Below, one piece after another: positions 1 to 58,702 of a stretch of DNA of 64,000 bases. Positions within the stretch are counted from its first letter, which is position 1. Every line of letters starts with the position of its first letter. Location of the stretch: NCBI GenBank assembly GCA_002269645.1, contig NIVC01002694.1:1-64000 (forward strand). The letters are read 5' to 3'. The stretch comes from Macrostomum lignano. Lineage: Eukaryota. The notes under the pieces were generated by a model. The model made no database searches, was not told the DNA's origin, and saw only the letters and a list, made by a program, of their open reading frames with translations. Made by a program: the position numbers and the translations under genes.

Positions 1-573
1 ATTTCACTGGGCCACTGGCACCAAGGGCTGGTTAGAGCAGAGCTCAACTGATAACTCTCTTATCTCTGAAACTGTCAGACAAAGGCAAAAAGTCCATCTA
101 TTTTTCCTCTCTCAACCTTCCTTTCTGCCCCCATCTCCCTCTCGATCAGTCATCTTGACCTGAAAATTAATAACTTTGTTTATTCGCATCGATTAACTCG
201 GCTGGGCCTTCGTCTTCTCGGAAAAAAACTTTTCCAAACTAATAGAGAGTCTGCAAAAGCAAAATAAGTTACAAGCTTAGTCAACTTTTCTTTTCTAATG
301 CAGAGATAGGATTGCTTTAGAAAGGAAAAATATCCCAGTCAAGAATTGGGATCGGGAAGTTTATCCCAGTTGAGCTGGCTGGGATCTCGGAGCGTAAAGA
401 AACTGCTTTGCATGATGTCGAGAGGAATCAAAAATTGTTGGTCAACACTTTTCTGCGACTGACAGCGAAGCAACATGAATGCTGGTTAACAACATCCAGT
501 GTTAGTCATGCGAATTGAGGCGCTCTGCGCTACTAGCATACCACTCTATCTTAGAATTATATCATTTCAACAA

Positions 574-2933
574 GATTCTATCTTCGATTCTATCTCCGAT
601 TCTATCCTCATCTTGACATGATTCTATCTCCGATTCTATCCTCATCTTGACATGATTCTATCTCCTTCTATCCTCATCTTGACATGATTCTATCTCCGGT
701 TCTATCCTCATCTTGACATGATACTATCTCCGATTCTATCCTCAGCTTGACATGATTCTATCTCCGATTCTATCCTCAGCTTGACATGATTCTATCTCCG
801 ATTCTATCCTCAGCTTGACATGATTCTATCTCCGATTCTATCCTCATCTTGACATGATTCTATCTCCGATTCTATCCTCAGCTTGACATGATTCTATCTC
901 CGATTCTATCCTCATCTTGACATGATACTATCTCCGATTCTATCCTAATATTGACATGATTCTATCTCCGATTCTATCCTCATCTTGACATGATACTATC
1001 TCCGATTCTATCCTCATCTTGACATGATTCTATCTCCGATTCTATCCTCATCTTGACATGATTCTATCTCCGATTCTATCCTCAGCTTGACATGATTCTA
1101 TCTCCGATTCTATCCTCATCTTGACATGATTCTATCTCCGATTCTATCCTAATATTGACATGATTCTATCTCCGATTCTATCCTCATCTTGACATGATTC
1201 TATCTCCGATTCTATCCTCATCTTGACATGATACTATCTCCGATTCTATCCTCATCTTGATATGATTCTATCTCCGGTTCTATCCTCATCTTGACATGAT
1301 TCTATCTCCGATTCTATCCTAATATTGACATGCTTCTATCTCCGATTCTATCCTCATCTTGACATGATTCTATCTCCGATTCTATCCTCATCTTGACATG
1401 ATTCTATCTCCGTTCTATCCTCATCTTGACATGATTCTATCTCCGATTCTATCCTCATTTTGACATGATTCTATCTCCGGTTCTATCCTCATCTTGATAT
1501 GATTCTATCTCCGTTCTATCCTAATCTTGACATGATTCTATCTCCGGTTCTATCCTCATCTTGACATGATTCTATCTCCGATTCTATCCTAATATTGACA
1601 TGATTCTATCTCCGATTCTATCCTCATCTTGACATGATTCTATCTCCGATTCTATCCTCATCTTGACATGATACTATCTCCGATTCTATCCTCATCTTGA
1701 TATGATTCTATCTCCGATTCTATCCTCATCTTGACATGATTCTATCTCCGGTTCTATCCTCATCTTGACATGATTCTATCTCCGGTTCTATCCTCATCTT
1801 GACATGATACTATCTCCGATTCTATCCTCAGCTTGACATGATTCTATCTCCGATTCTATCCTCAGCTTGACATGATTCTATCTCCGATTCTATCCTCAGC
1901 TTGACATGATTCTATCTCCGATTCTATCCTCATCTTGACATGATTCTATCTCCGATTCTATCCTCAGCTTGACATGATTCTATCTCCGATTCTATCCTCA
2001 TCTTGACATGATACTATCTCCGATTCTATCCTAATATTGACATGATTCTATCTCCGATTCTATCCTCATCTTGACATGATACTATCTCCGATTCTATCCT
2101 CATCTTGACATGATTCTATCTCCGGTTCTATCCTCATCTTGACATGATTCTATCTCCGATTCTATCCTCAGCTTGACATGATTCTATCTCCGATTCTATC
2201 CTCATCTTGACATGATTCTATCTCCGATTCTATCCTAATATTGACATGATTCTATCTCCGATTCTATCCTCATCTTGACATGATTCTATCTCCGATTCTA
2301 TCCTCAGCTTGACATGATACTATCTCCGATTCTATCCTCATCTTGATATGATTCTATCTCCGATTCTATCCTCAGCTTGACATGATTCTATCTCCGATTC
2401 TATCCTCATCTTGACATGATTCTATCTCCGATTCTATCCTCAGCTTGACATGATTCTATCTCCGATTCTATCCTCATCTTGACATGATTCTATCTCCGAT
2501 TCTATCCTAATATTGACATGATTCTATCTCCGATTCTATCCTCATCTTGACATGATACTATCTCCGATTCTATCCTCATCTTGACATGATACTATCTCCG
2601 ATTCTATCCTCATCTTGATATGATTCTATCTCCGGTTCTATCCTCATCTTGACATGATTCTATCTCCGATTCTATCCTAATATTGACATGCTTCTATCTC
2701 CGATTCTATCCTCATCTTGACATGATTCTATCTCCGATTCTATCCTAATATTGACATGATTCTATCTCCGGTTCTATCCTCATCTTGACATGATTCTATC
2801 TCCAATTCTATCGTCATCTTGACATGATTCTATCTCCGATTCTATCCTCATCTTGACATGATTCTATCTCCGATTCTATCCTAATCTTGACATGATACTA
2901 TCTCCGATTCTATCCTCATCTTGACATGATTCT
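574..2933. repeat. 34-bp tandem minisatellite (~69 units)
   Basis: Unit GATTCTATCTCCGATTCTATCCTCATCTTGACAT repeated head-to-tail; recurrent variants (CAGC, TAATATT, GATAC). Confidence 0.97.
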
Positions 2934-3214
2934 AAGTTGATTTCTTACAGTGCAAAAATCAATGAGGACAATGCAAGGTCACGTGCGTAGGGTCAAGAAA
3001 GATAATTAGAAAGAATTATTTTTCCCAGAACTGTTCTTGAATTGCTAGAAGTTCTCAACAATATTTCGTTCGCATTGTGTACTTTACAGTGCCTTTTGCC
3101 TCTCTAAACCTGAAGTCTGAGCTGATTCTATGTGCAACACGCTTCTGTGGCCCCTTTATAAATATCTAATGGTAACCCTTTGTACCCTTTGCCCTAGTGG
3201 CCCTTCCTTGCTAC

Positions 3215-4050
3215 CCCTGTATCTCTCTATCACAGTATGTCTCTATCGAAATACTCCTTCCTCTCTACCCCAGTGTCTCTATCCCAATACCCCTTTCTCT
3301 CTACCCCAGTGTGTCTCTATCCCAATACCCCTTCCTCTCTACCCCAGTGTGTCTCTATCCCAATACCCCTCCCTCTCTTACCCCAGTGTGTCTCTATCCC
3401 AATACCCCTCCCTCTCTACCCCAGTGTGTCTCTATCCCAATACCCCTCCCTCTCTACCCCAGTGTGTCGCTATCCCAATACCCCTTCCTCTCTACCCCAG
3501 TGTGTCTCTATCCCAATACCCCTTCCTCTCTACCCCAGTGTGTCTCTACCCCAATACCCATTCCTCTCTACCCCAGTGTGTCTCTATCCCAATACCCCTT
3601 TCTCTCTACCCCAGTGTGTCTCTATCCCAATACCCCTCCCTCTCTCTACCCCAGTGTGTCTCTATCCCAATACCCATCCCTCTCTTACCCCAGTGTGTCT
3701 CTATCCCAATACCCCTCCCTCTCTACCCCAGTGTGTCTCTATCCCAATACCCATTCCTCTCTACCCCAGTGTCTCTATCCCAATACCCCTCCCTCTCTAC
3801 CCCAGTGTGTCTCTATCCCAATACCCATCCCTCTCTTACCCCAGTGTGTCTCTATCCCAATACCCCTTCCTCTCTACCCCAGTGTGTCTCTATCCCAATA
3901 CCCCTCCCTCTCTACCCCAGTGTGTCTCTATCCCAATACCCATCCCTCTCTTACCCCAGTGTGTCTCTATCCCAATACCCCTTCCTCTCTACCCCAGTTT
4001 GTCTCTATCCCAATACCCATTCCTCTCTACCTCCCGTATCTCTTTACCCC
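3215..4050. repeat. ~38-bp C/T-rich minisatellite
   Basis: Unit CCCCAGTGTGTCTCTATCCCAATACCCCTTCCTCTCTA; explains the three overlapping repetitive ORFs at 3130-4276. Confidence 0.95.
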
Positions 4051-4518
4051 AATAACCCGTTTCCTTTGCCCTCCTATTCCTTCCTATTCCTTTACCCTCT
4101 TCTTCCTCTGCACTCGCGCTCACTCACAAACCACCCAACCGTACACACATTTTAATTTAGTGCATCTAAAGTCAATCACCATTCTATCCCGAATTTTTTA
4201 TCTGAAAATCTTCCATGCTTCAGTCGCTCCAAATCCCCTTTCAAGTCGGCACCCAAAGCCGCGGCGGCAGCATTAAACAAAGCCAAAAAAGAAAGGTCTA
4301 ACACTAATCCGACTGTAACAGACAAGCGGTTAATGAGTTTCCAAAAGCTGGCCAGGGACAAAAGGAGAAACAAGAAAGATTTGCATGTTTCTCCCGGATA
4401 TGAAGATAATCCCAAGAAGGATTTAGCGGCTCCAAACACAGCTTATCGACTAATAAATGGCTTTGGTATATGCTACCCATCATCAGCTTGCGGCACGCCT
4501 TCCCAAAACCGACGATTG

Positions 4519-4521
<3 letters not shown>

Positions 4522-4589
<68 letters not shown>

Positions 4590-4625
4590 TTCTCTCTCTC
4601 TCTTCTCTCTTCTCTTTCTCTCTCT

Positions 4626-4689
<64 letters not shown>
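4522..4689. repeat. (CT)n microsatellite
   Basis: Near-pure CT dinucleotide run. Confidence 0.98.
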
Positions 4690-4691
<2 letters not shown>

Positions 4692-4896
4692 GTTAAAGCT
4701 CGATCGAAGATAAAGTGGCCAATATACGAAACCAGTATTTCTGAAACAAAAGACTAATCATTATAGTCCAAACACTCCAAGTCCACATCCAAGAATTTTA
4801 ACCTTTTACAATCTACATTTACGAGTGCAGCCAAAAGCTAATAGAAGTTCGACTATTAGTCAGTTTACAGTTAAGGCAAAACAAAACGCAGGAAAT

Positions 4897-5833
4897 CTAA
4901 CAGGTGACACTATCCTGTCTAACAGGTGACACTATCCTGTCTAAAAGGTGACACTATCCTGTCTAACAGGTGACACTGTCCTGTCTAACAGGTGACACTA
5001 TCCTGTCTAACAGGTGACACTGTCCTGTCTAACAGGTGACACTATCCTGTCTAACAGGTGACTCTATCCTGTCTAACAGGTGACTCTATCCTGTCTAACA
5101 GATGACACTATCCTGTCTAACAGGTGACACTATCCTGTCTAAAAGGTGACACTATCCTGTCTAACAGGTGACACTATCCTGTCTAACAGGTGACTCTATC
5201 CTGTCTAACAGATGACACTATCCTGTCTAACAGGTAACACTATCCTGTCTAACAGGTAACACTATCCTGTCTAACAGGTGACACTATCCTGTCTAACAGG
5301 TGACACTATCCTGTCTAACAGGTGACACTGTCCTGTCTAACAGGTGACACTATCCTGTCTAAAAGGTAACACTATCCTGTCTAACAGGTGACACTGTCCT
5401 GTCTAACAGGTGACACTATCCTGTCTAACAGATGACACTATCCCGTCTAACAGGTGACACTATCCTGTCTAACAGGTGACACTGTCCTGTCTAACAGGTG
5501 ACACTATCCTGTCTAAAAGGTAACACTATCCTGTCTAACAGGTGACACTGTCCTGTCTAACAGGTGACACTATCCTGTCTAACAGGTGACACTATCCTGT
5601 CTAACAGATGACACTATCCTGTCTAACAGGTGATACTATCCTGTCTAACAGGTGACACTATCCTGTCTTACAGATGTCACTATCCTGTCTAACAGATGAC
5701 ACTTTCCTGTCTAACAGGTAACACTATCCTGTCTAACAGGTGACACTATCCTGTCTAACAGGTAACACTATCCTGTCTAACAGGTGACACTATCCTGTCT
5801 AACAGATGACACTATCCTGTCTAACAAGTGACA
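4897..5833 (+). repeat. 22-bp minisatellite, family A (copy 1)
   Basis: Unit CTAACAGGTGACACTATCCTGT; the same unit recurs at 31287-32003 and reverse-complemented at 51272-51620. Confidence 0.97.
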
Positions 5834-6502
5834 CATCTTAACAAGAGACAAAACTGTTACAGAAGACCTGGGGTGACACTTGAGTCTTATAGGTAAAACT
5901 CAGATCCAACAGCCAACACCTGTGCAAGATACCGACAATAAGTAATTTACAGTAGTGCACAAGTCGACCTGCAGATCTGTACTTGTGCCTGTATCTACAG
6001 CCTTGTTTTCAGGCTAAGGCATATGTCAGGTAAAATGCATTTTTGTCCACATTTTCACTTCGCTAAACAATGCTTGCTGCAAGATACGCCTCCACGTCTT
6101 TTTTCCAAACTTTCATTCCGCACTCCTAAAAAAGTTTTTCTGTTGACTGCGCGGAAGTGCTGCTGGGTTTAAAATATCTCTCTACTCTACTCTGCTTATA
6201 TGATGAGGCATGTAGGGACACAGAGGGGAGGCTGGGGCTGCTCCAAAGCTGAAAGCTGAGAATGATAAACGCTGCAAGAATGCGCCCGAGTCAGACATTT
6301 GCCACTGAAATAGATAAGCTGCGTGATGGAAGACGAGGTAAAAAAGTGCTTCCTGTTGCTGTGTACCTTTTTTTCCTGGTTTCTTTACTTTATCACATAG
6401 CTCCCAGTCGCTCTCCCCGCTTTCACCACTGCGACTCACGAAAAGAGCGCGGACACAGTGGGACAGAGGTCCCCGTTTGAACTGGCTGGCTGCGGAGGCC
6501 TT

Positions 6503-47968: not shown

Positions 47969-48009
47969 CTGTGAAAATCGATTTTTTTACTTTCTGTTTT
48001 ACTTGACTT

Positions 48010-49640
48010 CAGGGTCTGAGGATTCGGATTTCTGGGTCTGAGGATTGGGATTTCTGGGTCTGAGGATTGAGATTTCTGGGTCAGAGGATTGGGATTTCAG
48101 GATCTGAGAATCGGAACTTCAGGATCTGAAGGATCGCGGGACTTCATGGTCTAAGGATCGGGACTTCAGGATCTGAGGATCGGGACTTCGGGATCTGAAG
48201 ATCGGGACTTCAGGTTCTGAGGATTGGTGAGACTTCAGGATCTGAGGATCGGGACTTCGGGATCTGAAGATCGGGACTTCGGGATCTGAAGATCGGGACT
48301 TCAGGGTCTGAGGATTGGTGGGACTCCAGGATCTGAGGATCGGGACTTAAGGATCTAAGGATTGGGACTTCAGGATCTGAGGATCGGGACTCCAGGATCT
48401 GAGGATCGGGACTTCATGGTCTAAGGATCGGGACTTCAGGATCTAAGGATCGAGACTTCAGGGTTTGAGGATTGCTGGGACTTGAGGATCTAAGGATTGA
48501 GACTTAAGGATCTAAGGATCGGGACTTCAGGATCTGAGAATCGGGACTTCGGGATCTGAAGATCGGGACTACAGGGTCTGAGGATTGGTGAGACTTCAGG
48601 ATCTGAGAATCGGGACTTCGGGATCTGAAGATCGGGACTTCAGGGTCTGAGGATTGGTGAGACTTGAGGATCTGAGGATCGGGACTTCGGGATCTGAAGA
48701 TCGGGACTTCAGGGTCTGAGGATCGGGACTTCAGGGTTTGAGGATTGGTGGGACTTCAGGATCTGAGAATCGGGACTTCGGGATCTGAAGATCGGGACTT
48801 CAGGGTCTGAGGATTGGTGAGACTTGAGGATCTGAGGATCGGGACTTCGGGATCTGAAGATCGGGACTTCAGGGTCTGAGGATCGGGACTTCAGGGTTTG
48901 AGGATTGGTGGGACTTCAGGATCTAAGGATCGGGACTTCAAGTTCAGAGGATCGGGACTTCGGGATCTGAAGATCGGGACTTCAGGGTCTGAGGATTGGT
49001 GGGACTCCAGGATCTGAGGATCGGGACTTAAGGATCTAAGGATTGGGACTTCAGGATCTGAGGATCGGGACTCCAGGATCTGAGGATCGGGACTTCATGG
49101 TCTAAGGATCGGGACTTCAGGATCTGAGGATCGGGACTCCAGGATCTGAGGATCGGGACTCCAGGATCTGAGGATCGGGACTTCAGGATCTGAGGATTGG
49201 GACTTCAGGATCTCAGGATCGAGACTTCAGGGTTTGAGGATTGGTGGGACTTCAGGATCTAAGGATCGGGACTTCAAGTTCTGAGGATCGGGACTTCGGG
49301 ATCTGAAGATCGGGACTTCAGGGTCTGAGGATTGGTGAGACTTCAGGATCTGAGGATCGGGACTTAAGGATCTAAGGATTGGGACTTCAGGATCTGAGGA
49401 TCGGGACTCCAGGATCTGAGGATCGGGACTTCAGGATCTGAGGATTGGGACTTCAGGATCTCAGGATCGAGACTTCAGGGTTTGAGGATTGGTGGGACTT
49501 CAGGATCTAAGGATCGGGACTTCAGGTTCTGAGGATCGGGACTTCGGGATCTGAAGATTGGGACTTCAGGGTCTGAGGATTGGTGAGACTTCAGGATCTG
49601 AGGATCGGGACTTCAGGATCTGAGGATTGGGACTTCAGGA
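48010..49640. repeat. 22-bp minisatellite filling an intron (~1.6 kb)
   Basis: Unit GGATCTGAGGATCGGGACTTCA. Confidence 0.96.
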
Positions 49641-49779
49641 TTCAGAGAATTTAAAACTTCAGGATCAGGACGATTTATGACTGCAGAGTGACTCTCTCAA
49701 GTCAAGGATAGAAGTTTCGAGACTTGAATTATTAGTTTTAAATTTAAACAAACAAGCTAAAAACAAAAAGATCACTCAC

Positions 49780-49971
49780 AAACAGATTCCCCTGCAGCTG
49801 CACTCCAACCACCTGAAGCAGCAGCTGCCGCAGCTGCCAGCCTCCCAGAGCATTGATGGGGCCGCTCTCCAGTCGTAATCGGTCGCGCACAAGTCGCAGT
49901 GCAGCCGTCTTTGCAGACCCTCCACTCAAGCTAGCGGTCGCGGCAGTTGAGGTCAGACGATCGTGAAGACG
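49780..49971 (-). CDS. Sorting-nexin-like gene, internal exon (helical, BAR-like)
   Basis: Acceptor TTTTTCCCAG|CGT, donor TTT|GTGAGT; 192 nt, phase 0-0, open frame. Confidence 0.65.
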
Positions 49972-50084
49972 CTGGGAAAAATGTTTGGAACAAGTTTTTT
50001 TAATTGGCTGTCACTGTCGACAGTCCAGGATATCCAATTTCAATATAGATATCCCATTCTCTGTAGTCAAAATATTCCCGATTC

Positions 50085-56404: not shown

Positions 56405-57433
56405 TAAGTAAGTCAAGTAAGTCAGGCGCCTATGTTTAACGTGGGCCCTAGAAGCCATTGACGTGTTGATTCTTAACAGATCTTGTCTATCTTCTTGGGT
56501 TGCTACGCAAGACTTGCAAGAACGTGCAAGATCTTCGCTATGTTAATACTTAGGTAAACTTACCAGATCTGGGCGACTTGCTACGTCGTGCAAGATGTTA
56601 ACTTTTATATCTTTTTAAAGCTTCGAATCGCATATTTTATTAATTTTATTGTCCCATTTTGCCATAAAATAAATAATAATAAAGCTAGAACACTTTGGCC
56701 AAATGAATGACAAAACAAATGTACCTCCCTTCTTAGAAGATCCTGCAAGAACCGAGCAGATTGAGAAGATCTGCTAAGAATGGCACAGAGACAAGATCTG
56801 CTAAGTTTGAGAAACAGAATGTCCTCTAGGATGACTTTTTTAGAGGTTCGGCCCAAAAACGTGCGTCCTGACACCTACACCTCTCCCCTTTGTGGCCACT
56901 CGTGGCCGGCGAGAGGTTAAAATTGTTGTTGTTGTTGTCTTTGACTTTGTATGCATTTACACCAAAGATTTATAAACAATTATGCATTATTTTCTTAGCA
57001 AGTCGTCAACAAGGCTTATTGTTGTGAAACTGTTGTGAATATTCAATTCTTGTGAAACTACATAAAACTGTACAGCCTCAAAGACATTGAATCGTAAAAC
57101 TTGCACAGTCCGCGGCCGGTTGCAATATCGAATGTTACATCATGTACCTCGTTATTATTCTAGGAGTCTATCCAGCGTACGAGAACGTACTGAACACTAC
57201 ATTACCAACATTGATGGTAAAACATTGCCTAATCAGGCGTTACACTTAAAATTGGAGAGACTGAAATGTTTAACGAAATTGAAACAATCGGGCATCGTTA
57301 CTTGGTAAGAAAACGTTTTTATTATCAGTTTCTATCAAGTTCGCCAGCCAACTTTTTGTCACCGAATTCGTTATAGTCTGTCGCGTACACTTGCTCGCCA
57401 ATTTATACTTTTAGAGACGATCGCACGTACCGG

Positions 57434-57527
57434 TCACCAGCAGAACAGCCACTTGCAGGAGAATTTCGACGAATGATAATTATAGGCCTTGCCAGGGACG
57501 CTTTTTATCGCGCTGCGCTTGCCAAAT
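57434..57527 (-). CDS. npf: Neuropeptide F precursor, exon 2
   Basis: Acceptor TTTTCAG|A completes Arg (CG+A); then FGKR (amidation and dibasic site) SAIKSVPGKAYNYHSSKFSCKWLFCW*. Confidence 0.9.
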
Positions 57528-57839
57528 CTGAAAATTTGGGAACAATTATAGGAGAGAAGATTAGACTAATTATACAGCATCCATCACTGGCAAAACTATA
57601 GTGCGGTGGAATCTATAGTAGAGTGAAGCAATTAAGAATAAATTTTCTATTATTGAAGCTTCATGGTGCACACAAAACAGTTCCAATTCGAAGAAAAAGA
57701 TGGGAAACAAAAATGAAAGCGTTGCAAAATATGGAAGAATAGTGAGATCAGATAAAAATTGCAGACAAACTTGAGTAGTTCTGACTACTTTCGTTTTTTG
57801 AGCATGCCAGTTTAAATGTTTAACAAAGCATTCTTAAAA

Positions 57840-58416
57840 GGGGTTGTAGCCTACACCTTTTTGCCTTCTATTACGATAAAACTGCATTCAATTTCGGCAA
57901 CTCGAGTTTCTATTTAGACAAACTGATTTTCAATTTCGGAAAACTGCGCACACAATTTCGACAGCGCCAATCTAAGAAGGGAATACATACAGAAGAGAGG
58001 GATTTCTTAGATTCTGCACAAGTACTGCATTTGGAGTACATAAAAAGGTGTAGAAACTCGAGTTGCCGAAATTGAAGCCAGTTTGCCGAAATTGAATCCA
58101 GTTTTATCGAAATAGAACGCAAAAAGGTGTAGTGGTTAGAGCGTCGGACTCACGACTGAAAGGTTGGGGGTTCGATTCTCGACCCACTCGGAACAATTTG
58201 TGTTCTTGGACAAGACAACTTGAGTCTACATTGCTTCAGTTCACCCAGCTCTAAAATGGGTGCCAGTATTAGTTGGGGTAATTGAGGATCTGTGGTGACC
58301 CCCCTGTCCTTGGACTGAACAGCCGTACGCAGCCTTCAGATGCGCAGCGCAATAGCTGCAGCTGAGCTGTCGGTTGCACATCTGGCCATTAGGGCAGGTG
58401 TAATCAATAATAATAA
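57840..58416 (+). mobile_element. tRNA-derived SINE with CORE/Meta-like central domain (interrupted by a MITE)
   Basis: Removing 57854-58131 restores GGGGTTGTAGCCTAGTGGTTAGAGCG (A box). B box GGTTCGATTCTC at 58169-80; central TGTGTTCTTGGACAAGAC...CACCCAGCTCTAAAATGGGT; (AAT)n tail near 58406-16. Confidence 0.8.
57854..58129. mobile_element. 276-bp MITE with long TIRs and TA TSD
   Basis: Termini CACCTTTTTGC...GCAAAAAGGTG with ~40-60 bp of inverted similarity; TA at 57852-53 and 58130-31. Confidence 0.8.
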
Positions 58417-58451
58417 CTATTACTCTAAAAACGGATTATTATTTGACCTAC

Positions 58452-58702
58452 CGAGGCCTTCCAGCAAGAGCAAGGGCACTGTGCAGCTGCATTAGATAAT
58501 TTGCCAGCTCGCTGGGACTCTCCACGCCGAGACCATAGCCAACCTTCGCTTTCTTGTCGATGCTCATTGAGCTCTCGTCAGTAGGCTGCTTCATCATCGC
58601 AGGTGCACTTTGGCAGATGGGCACGAGCTGACAGCAAATCAGCGTCACCACCAGAAGCATCATCATCCTCAGCAGAGGTTTCCGTCGTTGTTGAAAAGGC
58701 AT
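58452..58702 (-). CDS. npf: Neuropeptide F (NPY-family) precursor, exon 1
   Basis: Signal-peptide-like MPFQQRRKPLLRMMMLLVVTLICCQLVPICQS, KK site, then AKVGYGLGVESPSELANYLMQLHSALALAGRP-R. Phase-2 donor CG|GTAGGT splits the penultimate Arg codon, the intron position conserved in NPY/NPF genes. Confidence 0.92.

What the first reader, a model, noticed from the sequence alone, without database searches (positions are those of the whole stretch)
57434..57527. NPF precursor encodes a second candidate peptide with a six-residue disulfide ring (CKWLFC)
After GRPRF-GKR the precursor continues SAIKSVP-GK-AYNYHSSKFSCKWLFCW-stop. The terminal Cys-Lys-Trp-Leu-Phe-Cys-Trp has the ring size and Trp/Lys/aromatic content of urotensin II (CFWKYC) and recalls somatostatin/allatostatin-C-type cyclic peptides at precursor C-termini. 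NPY/NPF C-flanking peptides are normally Cys-free and poorly conserved. The GK site could release SAIKSVP-amide and a 17-mer cyclic peptide, making this a possible hybrid NPF plus cyclic-peptide prohormone. The similarity is in pattern only, not proven homology.
Basis: partly seen in the sequence, partly recalled or inferred. Interest (0 to 1): 0.75.

Follow-up and report, generated by a model that had tools for sequence, protein, structure and literature searches.

The report
Flatworm NPF gene with Cys-looped tail
This is the ordinary neuropeptide F (NPY-family) hormone gene of the flatworm Macrostomum lignano; its short tail really does contain two cysteines that could close a small ring, but nothing found here shows that the ring is conserved, separately released, or related to urotensin or somatostatin.

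Summary
On the minus strand, exon 1 (58666-58452) joins exon 2 (57527-57434) through a GT-AG intron. The product is a 102-aa precursor ending GRPRF-GKR-SAIKSVPGKAYNYHSSKFSCKWLFCW-stop. The gene is Macrostomum lignano BOX15_Mlig016961g1 (PAA55876.1), whose annotation was built from RNA-seq. The intron splits the Arg codon of RPRF in phase 2, which is the hallmark of NPY/NPF genes.

The tail holds the only two Cys of the secreted proprotein, so a 6-residue disulfide loop is chemically likely. The tail is unusual: 31 other NPY/NPF C-flanks (494 residues), including three M. lignano paralogue families, contain no Cys. Its GC3 is coding-like.

The link to urotensin, somatostatin or allatostatin C rests on ring size and one Trp only:
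- The defining WK motif is missing (the ring is K-W-L-F).
- Current Pfam gives no Somatostatin or Urotensin hit.
- The gene structure is NPY-type.
- No dibasic site precedes the ring.
- No orthologue from another Macrostomum species could be reached, so conservation is untested.

The most likely reading is a lineage-specific, disulfide-looped C-flanking peptide released together with NPF. An independent bioactive cyclic peptide remains possible at about 0.15-0.2.

The parts
58452..58666 (-). Coding exon 1 of the NPF prohormone gene (BOX15_Mlig016961g1). It encodes the signal peptide (M1-S20), a spacer with a KK site (K38-K39), and the NPF peptide up to the first two bases of the Arg72 codon. 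The annotated start is an upstream in-frame ATG at 58702, which adds MPFQQRRKPLLR.
   Evidence: translation. (identical to PAA55876.1). (alignment with planarian NPYs; R70 P71 R72 G74 K75 R76 are invariant).
57528..58451 (-). Intron of 924 nt, GT-AG, phase 2, inside the codon of the penultimate Arg of RPRF (CG|A). This is the NPY/NPF-type conserved intron. It carries a hairpin-forming (MITE-like) inverted repeat at 57851-58132 and a tRNA-like fragment.
   Evidence: [quoted passage not shown].
57434..57527 (-). Coding exon 2 (terminal). It holds the third base of Arg72, then F73, the G74-K75-R76 amidation/cleavage site, the 26-aa C-flanking peptide S77-W102, and the TGA stop (57436-57434).
   Evidence: GC3 of the tail is 0.69, against 0.42 in the 3'UTR and 0.40 in the intron.
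57515..57523 (-). G-K-R codons: the prohormone convertase, carboxypeptidase and amidation site that ends NPF as ...GRPRF-NH2 and frees the C-flanking peptide.
   Evidence: Invariant in the alignment. M. lignano has a pc2 homologue (PMC4490696).
57437..57514 (-). C-flanking peptide SAIKSVPGKAYNYHSSKFSCKWLFCW, 26 aa. Monoisotopic mass is 3036.478 reduced and 3034.462 with a disulfide.
57440..57457 (-). Codons of Cys96-Lys-Trp-Leu-Phe-Cys101, the candidate 6-residue disulfide ring. Trp102 (57439-57437) follows, then the stop.
   Evidence: These are the only two Cys after the predicted signal peptide.
57488..57493 (-). Lys80 sits at P6.
   Evidence: Monobasic cleavage in spiralians is reported mainly at Arg with a second basic residue 3-6 positions upstream (PMC8557429). 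This site was not tested.
57318..57323 (-). AATAAA polyadenylation signal, 110 nt downstream of the stop. It supports exon 2 being the last exon.

Best explanation
This is the canonical neuropeptide F (NPY-family) prohormone gene of Macrostomum lignano.

Shown here: the two-exon structure, the NPY-type phase-2 intron in the Arg codon of RPRF, the GKR site, and a 26-aa C-flanking peptide ending CKWLFCW that is part of a transcript-based gene model.

Inferred:
- The signal peptide is removed after Ser20.
- Convertase cleavage at GKR, and possibly at KK38-39, followed by carboxypeptidase and amidating enzyme, yields ...GRPRF-amide.
- The same GKR cut automatically frees the 26-mer flank.
- The flank's two Cys are the only ones in the secreted proprotein, so they pair in the ER into a 6-residue loop.

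The flank is best read as a lineage-specific equivalent of CPON (the C-flanking peptide of vertebrate NPY), co-packaged and co-released with NPF. It is not a homologue of urotensin II, somatostatin or allatostatin C, and no separate receptor-mediated role is yet evidenced.
For: - Junction and translation.
- Identity to PAA55876.1 and to a second entry with the same tail.
- The annotation is RNA-seq based.
- A polyA signal lies 110 nt after the stop.
- Intron position and phase equal the NPY/NPF hallmark.
- The paralogue Mlig006883 has the same intron.
- NPF-family matches: krill NPF at E 7.8e-19 and M. lignano NPF paralogue P0024 at 1.3e-4; Pfam Hormone_3 at 18.6 bits.
- C-flanks of the family are short, unconserved and Cys-free: 31 tails, 494 residues, 0 Cys.
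- Mlig006883 has no flank at all (FGKRRR*), so flanks are evolutionarily labile and not needed to make NPF.
- The WK motif is absent and Pfam gives no Somatostatin or Urotensin hit.
- Tail GC3 is coding-like, 18/26 against 0.42 background, binomial p about 0.005.
Against: - The Cys pair is a clear outlier for the family. An exact 4-residue loop at the extreme C-terminus with Trp at loop position 2 is what bioactive cyclic peptides look like.
- A coding-like GC3 argues against a very recent accidental extension.
- UniProt's automatic name for the near-identical entry A0A1I8GT48 is 'Somatostatin domain-containing protein'.
- No data on selection are available, because no orthologue from another Macrostomum species was reachable.
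Confidence: 0.6

Rival explanations
1. The tail is a genuine second signalling peptide: a cyclic peptide with its own receptor, UII-like by convergence. It would be released either as the 26-mer or, after monobasic cleavage at Lys85 or Lys93, as a 17-mer or 9-mer. The gene would then be a dual NPF plus cyclic-peptide prohormone.
For: - It holds the only two Cys in the secreted proprotein, 4 residues apart, at the extreme C-terminus.
- It is unique among 31 other NPY/NPF flanks, which have no Cys.
- Local alignment to UII and URP beats 96-97.5% of shuffles.
- GC3 is coding-like.
- Lys80 at P6 partly satisfies monobasic-site rules.
Against: - No conservation data exist.
- No dibasic site precedes the ring.
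- The shuffle p of 0.025-0.04 mostly reflects the Cys spacing, which has a 6.5% chance given two Cys.
- The same-species paralogue Mlig006883 dispenses with any flank.
- No SS, UII or ASTC-type ligand has been reported in flatworms.
Confidence: 0.17
2. The ring is a true, highly derived member of the urotensin II / somatostatin-related (SSRP-like) or allatostatin-C family that became fused to the NPF gene.
For: [quoted passage not shown]
- Trp at loop position 2.
- C-terminal position in the precursor.
- UniProt's auto-name 'Somatostatin domain-containing protein' for A0A1I8GT48.
Against: - The WK motif, shared by all SSRP and SSRP-like peptides, is missing.
- The ASTC loop is 6 residues with Asn or FxP.
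- Pfam gives no Somatostatin or Urotensin hit even at E<=10 on the whole protein or the isolated tail.
- Tail against SS-14 has shuffle p 0.48.
- The ring lies in the same exon as F-GKR of NPF, with no phase-0 or phase-1 SSRP-type introns.
- An exhaustive HMMER search of 1.84 billion representatives found nothing matching the tail.
Confidence: 0.03
3. The disulfide loop is a structural or sorting element: a hydrophobic, aromatic C-terminal loop that helps proNPF aggregate or sort into dense-core vesicles. Disulfide loops of POMC and chromogranin B are reported to do this (established knowledge, not tested here). It would not be a ligand.
For: - The loop is K/W/L/F-rich and hydrophobic: FSCKWLFCW has GRAVY +0.88.
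- It is present on the proprotein before cleavage.
- No cleavage site isolates it.
Against: NPF paralogues in the same animal, and all other NPF/NPY precursors retrieved, lack any such loop and some lack a flank entirely. NPF sorting therefore does not generally need it. No direct evidence exists.
Confidence: 0.1
4. The tail is an evolutionary accident: a frameshift or stop-loss extension into former 3'UTR, or an alternative or mis-annotated 3' end, with no function.
For: - The exon-2 starts of the two canonical-intron paralogues align. The TAA stop of Mlig006883 falls on an out-of-frame ATAA in this gene after a 1-nt indel.
- Flanks are highly labile in the family.
- NPY/NPF genes often have a further intron in the C-terminal region.
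- GT dinucleotides exist at 57437 and 57430.
Against: - The alignment beyond the constrained FGK codons is only 13 nt, too short to test.
- Tail GC3 of 0.69 is coding-like, not UTR-like.
- Two database entries agree on the C-terminus and the NCBI model is RNA-seq based.
- A polyA signal follows at the expected distance.
Confidence: 0.1

Closest known systems
NPY/NPF prohormones with their C-flanking peptide (CPON in vertebrates), e.g. Schmidtea mediterranea npy-1 to npy-8, Arthurdendyus triangulatus NPF, decapod NPFs
   Same: - Signal peptide, a single long peptide ending GRPRF-GKR, and the phase-2 intron in the Arg codon.
- A short, unconserved C-terminal flank freed by the GKR cleavage.
   Different: The flank carries two Cys forming a potential 6-residue ring. 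All 31 other flanks examined have none.
[quoted passage not shown]
   Same: - Four residues between the Cys.
- Trp at loop position 2.
- The ring sits at the extreme C-terminus of the precursor with one or a few residues after it.
   Different: - Lys is at loop position 1, not 3, so the WK motif is absent.
- No dibasic site lies upstream.
- The ring is encoded inside an NPY-type gene rather than a three-exon phase-0/phase-1 SSRP-type gene.
- Pfam gives no hit.
Allatostatin C / somatostatin
   Same: A disulfide-looped peptide at the precursor C-terminus.
   Different: - The ASTC loop is 6 residues with Asn or FxP. The SS loop is 10-15 residues with FWK.
- Here the loop is 4 residues, KWLF.
- Tail against SS-14 is no better than shuffles.
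Vasopressin/oxytocin-type nonapeptides (including flatworm 'platytocin', PMC8896804, title only)
   Same: A six-residue C-x4-C ring.
   Different: By established knowledge, not tested beyond the sequence: those rings lie directly after the signal peptide, end in P-x-G-amide, and are followed by a Cys-rich neurophysin. None of this is present here.
Macrostomum lignano NPF paralogues Mlig006883, Mlig009822 and Mlig007142
   Same: - Same species, RPRF-GKR ends.
- Mlig006883 shares the canonical intron.
   Different: - Mlig006883 ends FGKRRR* with no flank.
- Mlig009822 and Mlig007142 are intronless tandem genes with three SRPRF units each and Cys-free tails.

Membership tests
NPY/NPF prohormone | Peptide ending R-x-R-F/Y followed by a G-K-R amidation/cleavage site | tested here: met
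   GRPRF-GKR. R70, P71, R72, G74, K75 and R76 are invariant in the alignment with planarian, krill and M. lignano NPFs.
NPY/NPF prohormone | Intron between the 2nd and 3rd base of the codon of the Arg in the C-terminal RF/RY (Mair et al. 2000, as quoted in PMC7314547) | tested here: met
   CCT CG|gtaggt...ttttcag|A TTT. The same position is found in paralogue Mlig006883.
NPY/NPF prohormone | Sequence similarity to family models | tested here: inconclusive
   Pfam Hormone_3 scores 18.6 bits, below the cut-off of 28.7. phmmer against 1.84 billion representatives finds krill NPF at E 7.8e-19 and M. lignano NPF paralogue P0024 at 1.3e-4.
NPY/NPF prohormone | The mature amidated peptide activates an NPY/NPF-type receptor | not testable with these tools
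   Needs peptide synthesis and a receptor assay.
Urotensin II / URP / SSRP-like | Cysteine loop with four residues between the Cys, at the precursor C-terminus | tested here: met
   C96-KWLF-C101-W102-stop. Definition from PMC9048919.
Urotensin II / URP / SSRP-like | WK motif inside the loop (C-x-W-K-x-C) | tested here: not met
   The loop is K-W-L-F: Trp at position 2 but Leu, not Lys, at position 3.
Urotensin II / URP / SSRP-like | [quoted passage not shown] | tested here: not met
   The ring is in the same exon as F-GKR of NPF. The only intron is the NPY-type phase-2 intron.
Urotensin II / URP / SSRP-like | Match to Pfam Somatostatin (PF03002) or Urotensin_II models | tested here: not met
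   No such hit at E<=10 for the whole precursor, for P0002, or for the isolated tail. UniProt's auto-name for A0A1I8GT48 could not be reproduced.
Urotensin II / URP / SSRP-like | Basic cleavage site immediately upstream of the mature peptide | tested here: inconclusive
   Only single Lys residues (K85, K93) lie between GKR and the ring, and there is no KR or RR.
Allatostatin C | Loop of six residues between the Cys in protostomes, usually with Asn and/or FxP | tested here: not met
   The loop has four residues and no Asn or Pro (PMC9048919).
CCWamide / agatoxin-like peptide | Eight conserved Cys and an amidated aromatic C-terminus | tested here: not met
   Only two Cys, and no Gly for amidation before the stop (PMC8557429).
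Any conserved cyclic-peptide family | Conservation of Cys-x4-Cys-Trp in orthologues of related flatworms | not testable with these tools
   No protein or contig from another Macrostomum species is in the searchable collections. The motif is absent from all planarian and M. lignano paralogues retrieved.

The most novel reading that the evidence does not exclude
The CKWLFCW loop is a real, separately acting cyclic neuropeptide. This would make it the first urotensin/somatostatin-like (convergent or extremely derived) ligand in Platyhelminthes, and the gene the first NPY-family prohormone known to encode a second, disulfide-cyclised messenger.
Probability: 0.12. Interest if true: 0.7.

Novelty: new variant of a known kind. 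Interest (0 to 1): 0.3.

Why it matters
If the loop were conserved and bioactive, it would show that an NPY-family gene can acquire a second, cyclic messenger. It would also give flatworms, where no somatostatin, urotensin or allatostatin-C-type ligand is described, a candidate for such signalling, and the peptide is easy to synthesise and test.

As things stand it is a well-formed NPF gene with an unusual but unvalidated tail. It is useful mainly as a clean example of the conserved NPY/NPF intron in a basal flatworm. It is also a caution that a machine-given 'Somatostatin domain' label on the near-identical UniProt entry could not be reproduced with the current Pfam scan.

Tried and rejected
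1. Orthologue hunt.
- The word-indexed search of 5.8 billion proteins found only the protein itself.
- Exhaustive phmmer of 1.84 billion representatives gave two real relatives, krill NPF and M. lignano Mlig009822. The other 32 hits included the query itself; the five sequences inspected were four polyubiquitins and one repetitive moth protein, and the uninspected hits showed the same multi-stretch pattern, consistent with inflated repeat matches.
- A profile search with planarian NPYs found 30 family members, none from another Macrostomum species.
- A JGI metagenome scan found nothing.

2. Literature.
- The string CKWLFC occurs in no held paper.
- McVeigh et al. 2009 (PMC2749192), which may list M. 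lignano NPF ESTs, is not held.

3. The idea that the tail is a decayed second NPF unit, as in the multi-copy paralogues.
- One pairwise alignment of 12 had shuffle p 0.004.
- A profile of internal NPF units gives no hit to the tail. Rejected.

4. Origin by frameshift or stop loss. The alignment is suggestive but covers only 13 informative nucleotides. Left as a low-weight rival.

5. CCWamide, vasopressin/oxytocin and ASTC memberships were rejected on defining features.

6. Rfam and ARAGORN on the locus gave only sub-threshold miRNA-like matches to the intronic hairpin and no tRNA.

7. The window holds no second RPRF-GKR or C-x4-C-W-stop site.

Full report
**1. What is there**

Reading the minus strand of 57300-58700 and splicing 58452 to 57527 gives a 102-aa open reading frame:

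MMMLLVVTLICCQLVPICQSAPAMMKQPTDESSMSIDKKAKVGYGLGVESPSELANYLMQLHSALALAGRPRF-GKR-SAIKSVPGKAYNYHSSKFSCKWLFCW-stop

- The donor is CG|gtaggt and the acceptor is ttttcag|A.
- The intron is 924 nt and sits between the second and third base of the Arg72 codon.
- The stop is TGA at 57436-57434.
- An AATAAA lies 110 nt downstream, at 57323-57318.
- The ring codons (Cys96-Cys101) are at 57457-57440.

**2. Identity and support for the gene model**

- The 102 residues are identical to the C-terminal 102 aa of NCBI PAA55876.1, 'hypothetical protein BOX15_Mlig016961g1' of Macrostomum lignano. That model starts 12 codons further upstream, at an in-frame ATG (58702) preceded by a stop two codons upstream.
- The window corresponds to contig NIVC01002694.1.
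- A second entry, UniRef A0A1I8GT48, differs only by S-to-G at the predicted -1 position of the signal-peptide cleavage site. Its tail is identical.
- The NIVC annotation was produced from genome-guided RNA-seq and transcript assemblies with experimentally defined poly(A) sites (PMC5730564).
- The junction and the C-terminus therefore rest on transcripts, not only on my reading.

**3. It is an NPY/NPF-family gene**

- The peptide ends GRPRF-GKR.
- The intron interrupts the Arg codon of RF in phase 2. Yanez-Guerra et al. 2020, citing Mair et al. [quoted passage not shown]
- Pfam Hormone_3 matches residues 49-74 at 18.6 bits, below its cut-off of 28.7.
- Exhaustive phmmer against 1.84 billion representatives finds krill NPF (E 7.8e-19) and a M. 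lignano NPF paralogue, P0024 (E 1.3e-4). The other 32 hits included the query itself. The five sequences inspected were four polyubiquitins and one repetitive moth protein, and the uninspected hits showed the same multi-stretch pattern, consistent with scores summed over repeats.
- A profile built with Schmidtea mediterranea npy-1 to npy-8 (Collins et al. 2010, supplementary file 6) retrieves 30 family members.

**4. The paralogue set in M. lignano**

- Mlig006883 has the same phase-2 Arg intron (982 nt). Its exon 2 is just A TTT GGC AAG AGG AGG CGC TAA, giving FGKRRR-stop with no flank.
- Mlig009822 and Mlig007142 lie 8 kb apart on one contig. They are intronless and each encodes three tandem SRPRF-GKR units. 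The 99-nt 'intron' annotated in Mlig007142g2 is exactly one repeat unit.
- None of these has Cys after the last GKR.

**5. How unusual is the tail?**

- Across 31 other C-flanks (494 residues) from planarians, M. lignano paralogues, A. triangulatus, crustaceans and unnamed environmental sequences, there is not one Cys.
- The single exception is a doubtful ENA fragment, P0067, at E 6.8.
- Against a generic 2% Cys frequency the excess is modest: p about 0.09 for two or more Cys in 26 residues, and 6.5% for this exact spacing given two Cys.
- The tail's third-codon-position GC is 18/26 = 0.69. That is like the rest of the CDS (0.63) and unlike the 3'UTR (0.42) or intron (0.40). Binomial p is about 0.005. 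This is weak evidence that the tail has been coding for some time.

**6. Is it urotensin, somatostatin or allatostatin-C-like?**

Koch et al. 2022 define the family as follows (PMC9048919):
- A C-terminal Cys loop with a shared WK motif.
- Genes with a phase-0 and a phase-1 intron.
- ASTC loops always of six residues in protostomes, with Asn or FxP.
- No flatworm is mentioned in the main text (a search for 'platyhelminth' and 'flatworm' found no occurrences).

How this tail compares:
- The loop size (4) and the Trp at loop position 2 fit.
- Lys is at position 1 and Leu at position 3, so the WK motif is absent.
- The ring is in the same exon as F-GKR of an NPY-type gene.
- No dibasic site precedes it.
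- Pfam returns no Somatostatin or Urotensin hit at E<=10 for the precursor, for P0002, or for the isolated tail. UniProt's automatic name 'Somatostatin domain-containing protein' for A0A1I8GT48 is not reproducible.
- My inference is that this name came from a partial K-x-x-C-K-x-x-F match to the N-terminal half of somatostatin-14, the alignment seen. That alignment is no better than shuffles (p 0.48).
- Alignment to UII and URP beats 96-97.5% of shuffles, but this mainly reflects the Cys spacing.

Membership of the UII/SSRP, ASTC, CCWamide (eight Cys) and vasopressin/oxytocin families is rejected on defining features. Resemblance in ring size stands.

**7. Processing**

- The GKR cleavage that produces NPF-amide also frees the 26-mer SAIKSVPGKAYNYHSSKFSCKWLFCW. 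No further step is needed for a disulfide-looped peptide to exist.
- The proposed GK site is a single Lys with Lys at P6.
- Monobasic cleavage in spiralians is reported mainly at Arg with a basic residue 3-6 positions upstream (PMC8557429). SAIKSVP-amide and a 17-mer are therefore possible but not predicted with any confidence.
- M. lignano has a pc2 homologue (PMC4490696).
- Expected masses are given.

**8. Origin ideas tested**

- A decayed second NPF unit: one of 12 pairwise alignments reached shuffle p 0.004, but a profile of internal NPF units does not detect the tail. Rejected.
- A 1-nt frameshift that bypassed an ancestral TAA: the TAA of Mlig006883 aligns with an out-of-frame ATAA here. 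Only 13 unconstrained nucleotides align, so this is untestable for now, and the coding-like GC3 argues against a recent event.

**9. Verdict**

- This is the canonical M. lignano NPF gene.
- Its C-flanking peptide is atypical in having a probable 6-residue disulfide loop.
- No test available here shows conservation, discrete release or homology to known cyclic peptides.
- One defining feature of the proposed analogue family, the WK motif, is not met.
- The decisive test is comparison with other Macrostomum genomes and transcriptomes, which exist (PMC10468722).
- Interest is modest at 0.3. The most novel reading still open, a real second cyclic messenger, has about 0.12 probability.

Noticed in passing
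window 57851-58132 (inside the NPF intron): A 282-nt hairpin-forming element with 50-nt terminal inverted repeats, 94% complementary, plus nested repeats. It looks MITE-like. The repeat arm was searched across the window and matched only at the element's own two arms. Rfam gives only sub-threshold plant-miRNA-like matches (27 bits against a gathering score of 94).
   Followed up: partly
window ~58121-58190, + strand (inside the NPF intron): By eye, a tRNA-like stretch (GGTGTAGTGGTTAGAGCGTCGGACTCACGACTGAAAGGTTGGGGGTTCGATTCTCGACCCAC) abuts the hairpin element. ARAGORN calls no tRNA anywhere in the window, so it is probably a tRNA-derived SINE or fragment.
   Followed up: partly
L002 10001-10426 and L003 10001-10492 (contig NIVC01000624.1): Two intronless NPF-like genes, Mlig009822 and Mlig007142, sit 8 kb apart. 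Each encodes three tandem SRPRF-GKR units. The 99-nt 'intron' in the annotated Mlig007142g2 model is exactly one repeat unit, so the genomic copy encodes 141 aa, not 108. This is copy-number variation or a mapping artefact.
   Followed up: partly
L004 3001-4258 (contig NIVC01003196.1): NPF paralogue Mlig006883 keeps the canonical phase-2 Arg intron but has a minimal last exon (FGKRRR-stop). Its TAA aligns with an out-of-frame ATAA in the window gene after a 1-nt indel. This hints that the Cys-looped tail may have arisen by frameshift or stop loss.
   Followed up: partly
window 58667-58702, minus strand: The annotated start codon adds MPFQQRRKPLLR in front of the hydrophobic MMMLLVV... signal sequence. 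The functional start is more likely the MMM at 58666, or the mRNA is trans-spliced between the two.
   Followed up: no
protein P0002 (UniRef A0A1I8GT48): UniProt auto-names this near-identical copy 'Somatostatin domain-containing protein', but the current Pfam-A scan gives no Somatostatin hit at E<=10. The only difference from the window protein is S-to-G at the predicted -1 position of the signal-peptide cleavage site.
   Followed up: yes
proteins P0003, P0037, P0040, P0041 (Meganyctiphanes norvegica): Krill 'Neuropeptide F' models carry three tandem GRPRF-GKR units in one 143-148 aa precursor. This is the same multi-copy layout as the intronless M. lignano paralogues and is unusual for long NPF.
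   Followed up: no
one search hit list: Thirty-two of the 35 hits in the exhaustive phmmer search were not NPF relatives. The five sequences inspected were four polyubiquitins and one repetitive moth protein, and the uninspected hits showed the same multi-stretch pattern. The scores are sums over many weak repeat matches to residues ~30-88. This is a caution for short queries.
   Followed up: yes
window 1-64000: The base composition is strongly patchy: 2-kb blocks range from 0.30 to 0.60 GC. There is marked negative GC skew at 1-6000 and positive skew near 48000-50000. This probably reflects repeats and genes and was not examined.
   Followed up: no
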